From positions 1 to 64,000 of the forward strand of contig JBLDXI010000041.1 in the NCBI GenBank assembly GCA_047495785.1: a DNA stretch of 64,000 bases, read 5' to 3'. The DNA is from Lepidodermella squamata. Lineage: Eukaryota; Animalia; Gastrotricha. A program made the position numbers and the translations under genes. Each line of letters opens with the position of its first letter. The first letter of the stretch is position 1. Under the pieces are notes generated by a model. It searched no databases. It was not told the origin of the DNA and saw only the letters and a program-made list of their open reading frames with translations. This document shows, piece by piece, positions 1 through 2,120 of the stretch.

Positions 1-99
1 ACCCTAACCCTAACCCTAACCCTAACCCTAACCCTAACCCTAACCCTAACCCTAACCCTAACCCTAACCCTAACCCTAACCCTAACCCTAACCCAACCC
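1..99. repeat. Terminal telomeric array (CCCTAA)n, i.e. TTAGGG on the - strand
   Basis: The window starts with ~15 perfect TAACCC units and ends in a variant CAACCC. The C-rich strand on + fits a left chromosome end. Confidence 0.97.
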
Positions 100-326
100 G
101 ATCAATCGCTCTTCAACAGCACTATCTGTTAAACTTTGTTTTCAACATATAGTAAGTTTGAGGACACTAGTGTAAAACCCTTCATAACTTTTGCTTCAAC
201 GTTTGACGAATATTGAAGTAATTTGAAGTAATTTTTTTCAAAGTTATGAAACTGTTCCAAGGCAGTAGACTTATGTTGAAATGTTTACAATTTATTTATT
301 TCTAATTCTATCCTTTGTAATTTCCC

Positions 327-460
327 TGACTCCCCTGGGTCATGGTGAAATATTAATAATTTGCCTGACTCCCCTGGGTCATGGTAAAATAAATAATTTC
401 CCTGACTCCCCTGGGTCATGGTGAAATAAATTCAAACAGAAAATGACTCCCCTGGGTCAT
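327..460. repeat. Four copies of the quasi-palindrome TGACTCCCCTGGGTCAT at ~37-41 bp spacing
   Basis: Identical 17-mers start at 327, 366, 403 and 444. Confidence 0.9.
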
Positions 461-722
461 TCTTCTGATTGAATTGTATTCATTTTTTGAATACAAATTT
501 TGTCTGAGTTCCTTTGAGCCATTTGTCGGGAATTTTTTATCGGATCTCAGTATTATCGCGGAGTGGTTAGGAACACATAATTTTTGTGATGAAGAATTAT
601 CACAAACGTGAAAATGATGCTCATCTTGGATCCCTATGATGGAGTAATGGTAGGGCCCGGTTTGACTCTCGGTAAAACGAGAGGCCCCGGTTTGCAGCTC
701 GTCTGTATTAAACTATTACCAA

Positions 723-775
723 TAACCCTAACCCTAACCCTAACCCTAACCCTAACCCTAACCCTAACCCAACCC
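723..775. repeat. Internal telomeric tract (TAACCC)8 plus AACCC
   Basis: Read directly from the sequence. Confidence 0.95.
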
Positions 776-786
776 GATTCTACTAA

Positions 787-851
787 GAGGTTAAAGTTAC
801 TGATGAGCTACACTAGCCAAGTAGCGAAACCGGTCTGACGATGGCTACCTC
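787..851 (+). ncRNA. Type I hammerhead ribozyme with minimal palindromic stem III and a pseudoknot
   Basis: Core CTGATGA 800-806; stem II GCTAC/GTAGC 807-811/821-825; GAAA 826-829; stem III within ACCGGT; GTC cleavage triplet ending 835; stem I GTTA/TGAC plus GAGG/CCTC. Loop II TAGCCA (814-819) is complementary to TGGCTA (842-847). Confidence 0.88.
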
Positions 852-1162
852 AACTCGAGTAGAATCTATGCTTTAAAGTCATAAAGCATATTATTAACCT
901 TACCGTTAATATTATTGGATTAAATATCCATTCATACAAAACGTGTGCTTACCCACATGTTAAGAATTCAGAATTTTTGTATTCTCTATTCTAGTCCGTC
1001 GTGACTTATTCGGTATAGACCTAGTACTATCCGATCTACAACATTTCACCACTGATTCGACATTCTCTTGATCGGTTCTTGCGGAAATAGTGGTTGGGCC
1101 CGGCCAATTCGCTACGTACGAATTCCCGGTTTACAGCTCGTCTGTATTAAATCTAAAGAAAA

Positions 1163-1221
1163 AACCCTAACCCTAACCCTAACCCTAACCCTAACCCTAA
1201 CCCTAACCCTAACCCTAACCC
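1163..1221. repeat. Internal telomeric tract, ~10 TAACCC units, preceded by an A-rich run
   Basis: Read directly from the sequence. Confidence 0.95.
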
Positions 1222-1301
1222 CTTTTGTCATTCGAGCTCGTATTAGCACGGCCACCAACTGCGGTGGTCACACAGCACATGAAAATAATTTAGTTAAAAA
1301 T

Positions 1302-1778
1302 ATGTGCAAATTGTTTCCCTCAGATTCGCTCAACGCCGACGTCGTACAAGTCCGGGACCAGTGGGTCAACAAGGCCATCGGCGAACTCCGTACTCGTTCG
1401 GGGTACGCTCGCTCCGTAGCCGCCCACGCCGTGTACGACGACGCGTCAGATGCGTTCAGGGGCTGTGCCAACCCCGCCGAAACAGCCGACTACGCCGCCC
1501 GCGCGTTCAACAAGGCGTGTCGTCAAGGCAGCACCGTGCAAGCAATCCGTCAGATGCGCAATGTCAACTTGGGCGTGTCGAGGGAGAACTTTGTCACCGC
1601 ATGGAAAGCTGCGCTGTTCGCCATGAACGGCAAAAACCTGCGAGACAACATAGTCTGCGGGTGGCAAGTTTTGCTTGAACAGCTAGCTCAATTTGATGAA
1701 CCGAAGGACCGTAGTAACCCTACTAACCCTAACCCTAACCCTAACCCGGTATTCAATAAGAAACTAACCCAACCCTAA
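1302..1778 (+). other. GC-rich ORF fragment of unknown family between telomeric tracts
   Basis: The open frame MCKLFPSD...EPKDRS runs into telomeric repeats. It is visibly GC-richer than its flanks and has no recognisable motif. Confidence 0.3.
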
Positions 1779-1793: not shown

Positions 1794-2120
1794 CTGGTCG
1801 AGTTTTACACTTCCCCGTACAATGGGACACAAAAATGGTCGAGGAGTTAATATAATCTGTTACACCGGCAGATTTATTTTTCGCGACTACGGCAGGATAT
1901 TCGTTTTTAAATGAACACCTAATGTAGTGTTCGTTTTTTTTCCGTCTCATATATTCAACTGTTTTCGTTGGTAACATATCTTTTCGAATTGAAATAGGCA
2001 TTTATTTCCAATTGCAAATGCTCCATATAATTGCGCATATAGTTTATCCAAGAAAATAATCAGATTTTCAATTTTGCGGATTTAAAAATATTAGATCTAT
2101 AAGCATCGGGTATGGACGGC

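What the first reader, a model, noticed from the sequence alone, without database searches (positions are those of the whole stretch)
787..851. Intact pseudoknotted hammerhead ribozyme ~25 nt downstream of a (CCCUAA)8 tract
All core nucleotides are present (CUGAUGA, G-C closing stem II, GAAA, GUC site at 835). Stem III is a tiny palindrome (ACCGGU) of the kind that suggests dimeric folding in PLE/retrozyme hammerheads. A perfect 6-bp loop II/stem I-bulge pairing (UAGCCA/UGGCUA) argues against a chance match. Inference: cleavage leaves an upstream RNA ending ~60 nt after a telomere-complementary tract that could anneal to the G-overhang, or it defines the 5' end of unit 2.
Basis: partly seen in the sequence, partly recalled or inferred. 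Interest (0 to 1): 0.85.

Follow-up and report, generated by a model that had tools for sequence, protein, structure and literature searches.

The report
Pseudoknotted hammerhead in telomere-stacked retroelement fragment
A real-looking self-cutting RNA motif sits in a short, gene-less piece of a Penelope-type jumping element stacked on an animal chromosome end; it belongs to a known ribozyme type, but carries an extra conserved brace (a pseudoknot) that reviews say this type usually lacks.

Summary
The type I hammerhead at 787-851 is real as a sequence: full core, a palindromic 2-bp stem III (dimer type) and a 6-bp loop II/stem I pseudoknot. It is the only match in 64 kb (0.007 expected). Cleavage was not tested. 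The pseudoknot covaries in related hammerheads from metagenomes, at least one set from bdelloid-rotifer RT elements. Reviews describe Penelope/Terminon hammerheads as usually lacking such contacts, but I could not read the two key primary papers.

The chain's polarity, other copies with non-telomeric upstream flanks, and rotifer relatives all link it to the downstream priming motif, 328 nt after the cut. The upstream tract is a junction or healing cap. Unit 2 starts 60 nt before the cut, so its template was uncut or re-ligated.

Best reading: the ribozyme-bearing terminal fragment of an endonuclease-less Penelope-like element or a non-coding passenger of one. Neighbouring unit 3 is an ORF1 fragment of such an element. 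The scan has noted this system and the pseudoknot many times on other pieces of this genome. New variant of a known kind.

The parts
787..851 (+). Type I hammerhead, dimer type, with loop II/stem I pseudoknot
800..806 (+). Core C3-A9 (CUGAUGA)
807..825 (+). Stem II (5 bp) and 9-nt loop II; 814-819 is the 5' pseudoknot strand
826..835 (+). GAAA core, palindromic stem III 829-834, C17 at 835 (predicted cut 835/836)
   Evidence: self-duplex of 828-835 is -9.7 kcal/mol
842..847 (+). 3' pseudoknot strand in the stem I internal loop
776..866 (+). Outer 9-bp helix 776-784/858-866 that encloses the ribozyme and starts at the first base of unit 2
867..1000 (+). Array of five hairpins after the ribozyme (z -5.8 on +, -3.5 on -)
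776..1162 (+). Unit 2: non-coding fragment, probably 5'-truncated, that carries the ribozyme; a 98%-identical copy or allele is in run X1
1088..1162 (+). 3' module shared with unit 1 (about 645-722), directly before the telomere-complement priming site
1163..1221 (+). Downstream telomere tract: inferred priming junction of unit 2
   Evidence: role inferred
723..775 (+). Upstream telomere tract: inferred healing cap on unit 2 and priming junction of unit 1, not a conserved partner of the ribozyme
   Evidence: role inferred
100..722 (+). Unit 1: non-coding, same 3' module, no hammerhead core
1222..1722 (+). Unit 3: 5'-truncated ORF1 of an endonuclease-less Penelope-like RT element, ending at an Asn-Pro-Asn telomere motif
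1..99 (+). Terminal telomere tract (chromosome end)

Best explanation
The motif is the hammerhead in the terminal (pLTR-like) region of a telomere-primed, endonuclease-less Penelope-like element family, or of a non-coding passenger that borrows its RT. Unit 2 RNA (+ strand) pairs with the G-rich overhang through the motif at about 1163, behind the shared 3' module. A trans-supplied RT copies it towards its 5' end, through the intact ribozyme, and stops at 776. Telomerase then caps the end (723-775), and unit 1 later primes on that cap. The ribozyme probably cuts at C835 only when two copies pair through the stem III palindrome, with the pseudoknot docking stems I and II. That would chop multi-unit read-through transcripts and leave the priming site on the downstream product. 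Shown: structure, multicopy family, link between ribozyme and 3' module, polarity, PLE nature of unit 3, pseudoknot covariation in relatives. Inferred: cleavage, dimer dependence, priming, the RT source and telomerase capping.
For:: run X1 has at least 6 distinct contigs over the ribozyme but only one listed over the unit-2 body. One 647-nt contig holds both the ribozyme and the 3' module with an unlike middle. Several have 156-249 nt upstream of the ribozyme, non-telomeric where shown; unit 3 is the ORF1 of an RT element (RT 27% identical to a bdelloid one, E 4e-20, no GIY-YIG seen), and all three homologues end at DRS..NPNP; the closest ribozyme relatives include a bdelloid RT locus (L096) with TCACCC just downstream, the Terminon layout (PMC6431247); a PLE RT initiates internally and mainly uses uncleaved RNA (PMC11167929), which fits an intact ribozyme in the copy.
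Against: No cleavage or RNA-end data: only assembled contigs were available, and the one possible RNA run (X2) is a guess, chimeric, and reads through 835/836 unchanged. Unit 2 has no ORF, so its RT is not identified here. The predicted monomer minimum-energy fold is inactive (-15.5 against -8.2 kcal/mol without the pseudoknot), and the double-hammerhead fold (-25.3 without pseudoknots) is less stable than the best cofold (-35.6). The ribozyme is 328 nt from the priming site, not adjacent as in Terminons.
Confidence: 0.7

Rival explanations
1. Telomere-targeted retrozyme: the RNA is cut at 835/836, ligated into a circle, primed at the internal motif and copied across the circle junction, so 776-835 is wrap-around sequence.
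For: An intact ribozyme 60 nt inside the copy is what wrap-around would give. The size (about 390 nt), lack of an ORF and strong structure fit metazoan retrozymes of 170-400 nt (PMC7229834). Unchecked scan notes report tandem arrays on other ends (s1-401990, s1-387825).
Against: Single copy, no tandem in this window. The X1 contig that runs past the 3' module does not return to the ribozyme in about 310 nt, and no back-joint was seen (contigs cannot show absence). An uncut linear template explains the same DNA.
Confidence: 0.17
2. One reading: cleavage matures the upstream RNA (unit 1 plus tract plus 60 nt) so that its tract anneals to the overhang.
For: Geometrically possible in this one chain; internal RT initiation tolerates a 3' tail. 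The 73-nt X1 contig begins at about 775-777, so 776 may be a recurrent boundary (inconclusive).
Against: Other copies lack an upstream tract. Relatives carry the motif downstream, 14 against 1. The tract fits a junction or cap.
Confidence: 0.07
3. The motif is a conserved RNA fold or a dead copy that does not cleave appreciably in vivo; it may serve as an RT-binding or packaging structure.
For: Low in vitro activity of PLE hammerheads; cleavage dispensable and no reads ending at the site for PAc; competing inactive fold.
Against: All catalytic nucleotides are intact and identical in the X1 copy over 777-847. Pseudoknots of this kind raise cleavage rates in other hammerheads (PMC3088659).
Confidence: 0.06

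Closest known systems
Terminon/Athena hammerheads of bdelloid rotifers (EN-deficient PLEs; PMC6431247, PMC8557442)
   Same: Type I with palindromic ACCGGU stem III; head-to-tail 5'-truncated units joined by telomere tracts; telomere-complement motif on the downstream side. Relatives share a 9-nt loop II and the same pseudoknot register.
   Different: TTAGGG host. The ribozyme is 328 nt from the motif rather than 7-41 nt, with a hairpin array and a conserved 3' module between. Unit 2 has no ORF.
Minimal/dimeric PLE hammerheads (Cervera and de la Pena 2014, PMC4209133)
   Same: Type I, unstable palindromic helix III, G10.1-C11.1, predicted dimer action.
   Different: Long bulged stem I with a Watson-Crick loop II contact; no extra nucleotide between 9 and 10.1; stem II of 5 bp. 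Reviews say PLE/Terminon motifs usually lack tertiary contacts (PMC7761336, PMC6155905).
Pseudoknotted hammerheads (Perreault et al. 2011, PMC3088659)
   Same: A stem I-stem II pseudoknot, which they predicted in about 40% of hammerheads of all three types and showed to speed cleavage.
   Different: Here it is combined with a dimer-type stem III in an animal telomeric retroelement.
Metazoan non-LTR retrozymes (PMC7229834; bioRxiv 10.64898/2026.07.22.740005)
   Same: Non-coding, about 390 nt, structured, type I hammerhead, PLE-associated.
   Different: Single copy, not a tandem; attached at a telomere motif; no circle shown.

Membership tests
Hammerhead ribozyme | Conserved core CUGAnGA, GAAA and NUH | tested here: met
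Hammerhead ribozyme | Three helices around the core | tested here: met
   Stems I and II form; stem III only 2 bp in a monomer, 6 bp between two copies
Hammerhead ribozyme | Reaches an Rfam gathering score | tested here: not met
   HH9 15.2 of 52 bits; rotifer-type relatives also fall short, best 30.8 of 34
Hammerhead ribozyme | Self-cleavage at H17 | not testable with these tools
   No raw RNA reads available
Dimeric PLE-type hammerhead | Type I topology with short palindromic helix III | tested here: met
   PMC4209133
Dimeric PLE-type hammerhead | Lacks loop I-loop II tertiary contact (as described in reviews) | tested here: not met
   6-bp pseudoknot with covariation in relatives
Dimeric PLE-type hammerhead | Lies in the pLTR of a PLE | tested here: inconclusive
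   Unit 2 has no ORF; the adjacent unit 3 is PLE ORF1
Terminon/Athena 3' end | Co-oriented, 5'-truncated units joined by telomere tracts at a chromosome end | tested here: met
Terminon/Athena 3' end | Telomere-complement repeats immediately downstream of the hammerhead | tested here: not met
   328 nt here against 7-41 nt in relatives
Terminon/Athena 3' end | Encodes an RT without endonuclease | tested here: not met
   None in unit 2; present in the relative of unit 3, L121
Non-LTR retrozyme | Tandem 150-450 bp units each with a hammerhead | tested here: not met
   One hammerhead in the window
Non-LTR retrozyme | Non-coding, small, highly structured | tested here: met
Non-LTR retrozyme | Accumulates as circular RNA | not testable with these tools
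   Only contigs; no back-joint seen

The most novel reading that the evidence does not exclude
Unit 2 is a telomere-targeted retrozyme. A pseudoknot-activated, dimer-gated hammerhead releases and circularises a non-coding RNA that a telomeric PLE RT copies onto chromosome ends from an internal priming module. The same pseudoknot would be an unrecognised, conserved activator of Terminon-type ribozymes from rotifers to this animal.
Probability: 0.17. Interest if true: 0.75.

Novelty: new variant of a known kind. Interest (0 to 1): 0.42.

Why it matters
The role of hammerheads in Penelope-like and Terminon elements is described as unknown, and their in vitro activity is low (PMC7761336, PMC4209133). 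A covarying pseudoknot just 3' of stem I suggests one testable reason: short constructs of this subfamily could omit the tertiary brace. The locus also shows the ribozyme and the telomere-priming site as separable modules in a TTAGGG animal. The single copy adds little to what the scan has already noted elsewhere in this genome.

Tried and rejected
Rfam at gathering threshold: nothing. Second hammerhead in unit 1, unit 3 or the rest of the window: none. ORFs 608-838 and 1068-1778 run through telomere tracts and are chance frames, except the unit 3 part. Word-index and Atlas searches of the unit 3 ORF were blank or gave weak leads only; the exhaustive search found it. Canonical hammerhead upstream of ORF1 in L121: none. 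Bacterial promoter scan: at chance level and not applicable. Host not identified; Argonaute is 80% identical to Lingula, so an invertebrate animal. Arkhipova 2017, Lunse 2017 and Gladyshev 2007 were not held, so the pseudoknot may already be drawn there. Variants in the unit-2 hairpins are mixed: 3 in loops, 1 keeps a pair, 2 break terminal pairs, so they are not evidence of selection.

Full report
Setting. The window is a chromosome end of an unidentified invertebrate animal. It has a terminal (CCCTAA)n tract at 1-99, further tracts at 723-775, 1163-1221 and 1723-1793, and ordinary eukaryotic genes further in. The tracts separate three co-oriented units: 100-722, 776-1162 and 1222-1722.

Observation. 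A descriptor search gives this single hit on both strands, against 0.007 expected per 64 kb of random sequence; the 6-bp pseudoknot alone has a 0.46% chance. Rfam does not reach threshold; rotifer-type relatives also fall short. Stem III is 2 bp with a 2-nt loop in a monomer, which cannot form, but 6 bp between two copies. This is the dimer architecture of metazoan and PLE type I hammerheads (PMC4209133). I add an outer 9-bp helix (776-784/858-866) and a five-hairpin array (867-1000, z -5.8). Without the pseudoknot the active-like monomer fold (-8.2) is less stable than an inactive fold (-15.5), so activity would lean on the pseudoknot and on dimerisation.

Pseudoknot. A core pattern search of metagenomes returned 120 loci, about half of the matches with stems I and II. 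A subfamily has a 9-nt loop II ending in CAA, like the window's, which pairs with the strand just after stem I. In 17 aligned sequences 89% of pseudoknot cells pair, one position shows A-U, C-G and U-A, and sliding the partners destroys pairing. The window copy keeps the register with two further double changes, A-U to G-C and G-C to C-G. Caveats: the sequences are related, I chose the register, and the tool's shuffle counts are not probabilities. One such locus (L096) has an RT whose best named relatives are from Adineta and Rotaria, 350 nt upstream of the ribozyme, with TCACCC just downstream. That is the Terminon layout (PMC6431247); the other loci were not assigned to a host. Pseudoknots between stems I and II are common in hammerheads generally (PMC3088659), but reviews describe PLE and Terminon motifs as usually lacking tertiary contacts (PMC7761336; PMC6155905). 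I could not read the two primary papers that might already show it.

Which tract matters. By the established model for endonuclease-less PLEs, the RNA's telomere-complement motif primes on the G overhang, so each unit's 3' end is proximal and its truncated 5' end is capped. Units 1 and 2 share a module right before their proximal tracts, and unit 3 ends in its tract at a conserved Asn-Pro-Asn motif. So 723-775 caps unit 2 and the priming site of unit 2 is at about 1163. Public data agree. Run X1 has at least six different contigs over the ribozyme. Several have 156-249 nt upstream of it, non-telomeric where the loose ends are shown. One carries both the ribozyme and the 3' module around an unlike middle. 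A copy or allele of the unit-2 body differs at 7 of 345 bases. The filter may have dropped contigs rich in telomere repeats, so capped copies could be under-counted. In the metagenome set the motif is downstream in 14 of 50 hits and upstream in 1. One X1 contig continues past the module through three degenerate repeats into other sequence; this could be an internal motif with a tail or a decayed junction.

Whose element. Unit 2 has no gene. Unit 3 matches two proteins (E 4e-7 and 8e-6). One is the ORF1 of a contig whose downstream RT resembles the bdelloid one (E 4e-20) and shows no GIY-YIG domain before its stop. The chain therefore contains an Athena-like element, which makes such an RT the likely copier of unit 2; this step is inferred. 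Whether unit 2 is the non-coding end of an autonomous element or a separate passenger cannot be told from 387 nt.

Mechanism. The DNA copy extends 60 nt beyond the cut site, so the template was uncut or re-ligated. An uncut template fits the in vitro finding that a PLE RT starts internally and mainly uses unprocessed RNA (PMC11167929). The most likely job of the ribozyme is dimer-dependent processing of multi-unit transcripts, leaving the priming site on the downstream product (confidence 0.7 for the whole reading). A circular retrozyme template is the main rival (0.17). No RNA ends could be read: only contigs exist, and the possible RNA run X2 is chimeric and unverified, although it shares five variants with X1.

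Limits and rules. Only 776-1162 was given to the reads tools, without the telomere tracts.

Verdict. Observation confirmed, interpretation partly supported. New variant of a known kind. The scan has noted the same system and pseudoknot on other pieces of this genome (unchecked notes). Interest 0.42.

Noticed in passing
window 1222-1751; L121:1102-1974; L122:61-609: Unit 3 is a truncated ORF1 of an endonuclease-less PLE. In all three homologues the telomere motif begins at the same conserved DRS..NPNP position, and L122 is also a fragment bounded by two tracts.
   Followed up: yes
window 93-103 and 768-778: Units 1 and 2 both begin with the same junction, CCCAACCCGAT; the other junctions differ. 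It may be a 5' signature or chance plus a repeat variant.
   Followed up: no
window 776-784/858-866: Unit 2 begins exactly at the base of a 9-bp helix, and an X1 contig also begins at about 775-777. This may mark a processed RNA 5' end rather than a random truncation.
   Followed up: partly
window 649-656 and 1088-1098: The shared 3' module has a G-rich, telomere-like stretch that is predicted to pair with the element's own CCCUAA priming motif in both units. An X1 variant keeps a similar stretch. It could mask the priming site.
   Followed up: partly
window 318-460: Unit 1 has four copies of a 17-nt hairpin-forming repeat at 37-41 nt spacing.
   Followed up: no
L096:3904-4270; L033:5161-5970; L062:25-560: Rotifer-type loci often carry two such hammerheads 300-760 nt apart on the same strand, which would allow dimer folding in cis.
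   Followed up: no
L121:390-445: Hammerhead-like but non-canonical motif upstream of ORF1; not counted as a ribozyme.
   Followed up: partly
window 1803-1818 and 2516-2531: Exact 16-nt direct repeat just inside the last tract and 713 nt further in.
   Followed up: no
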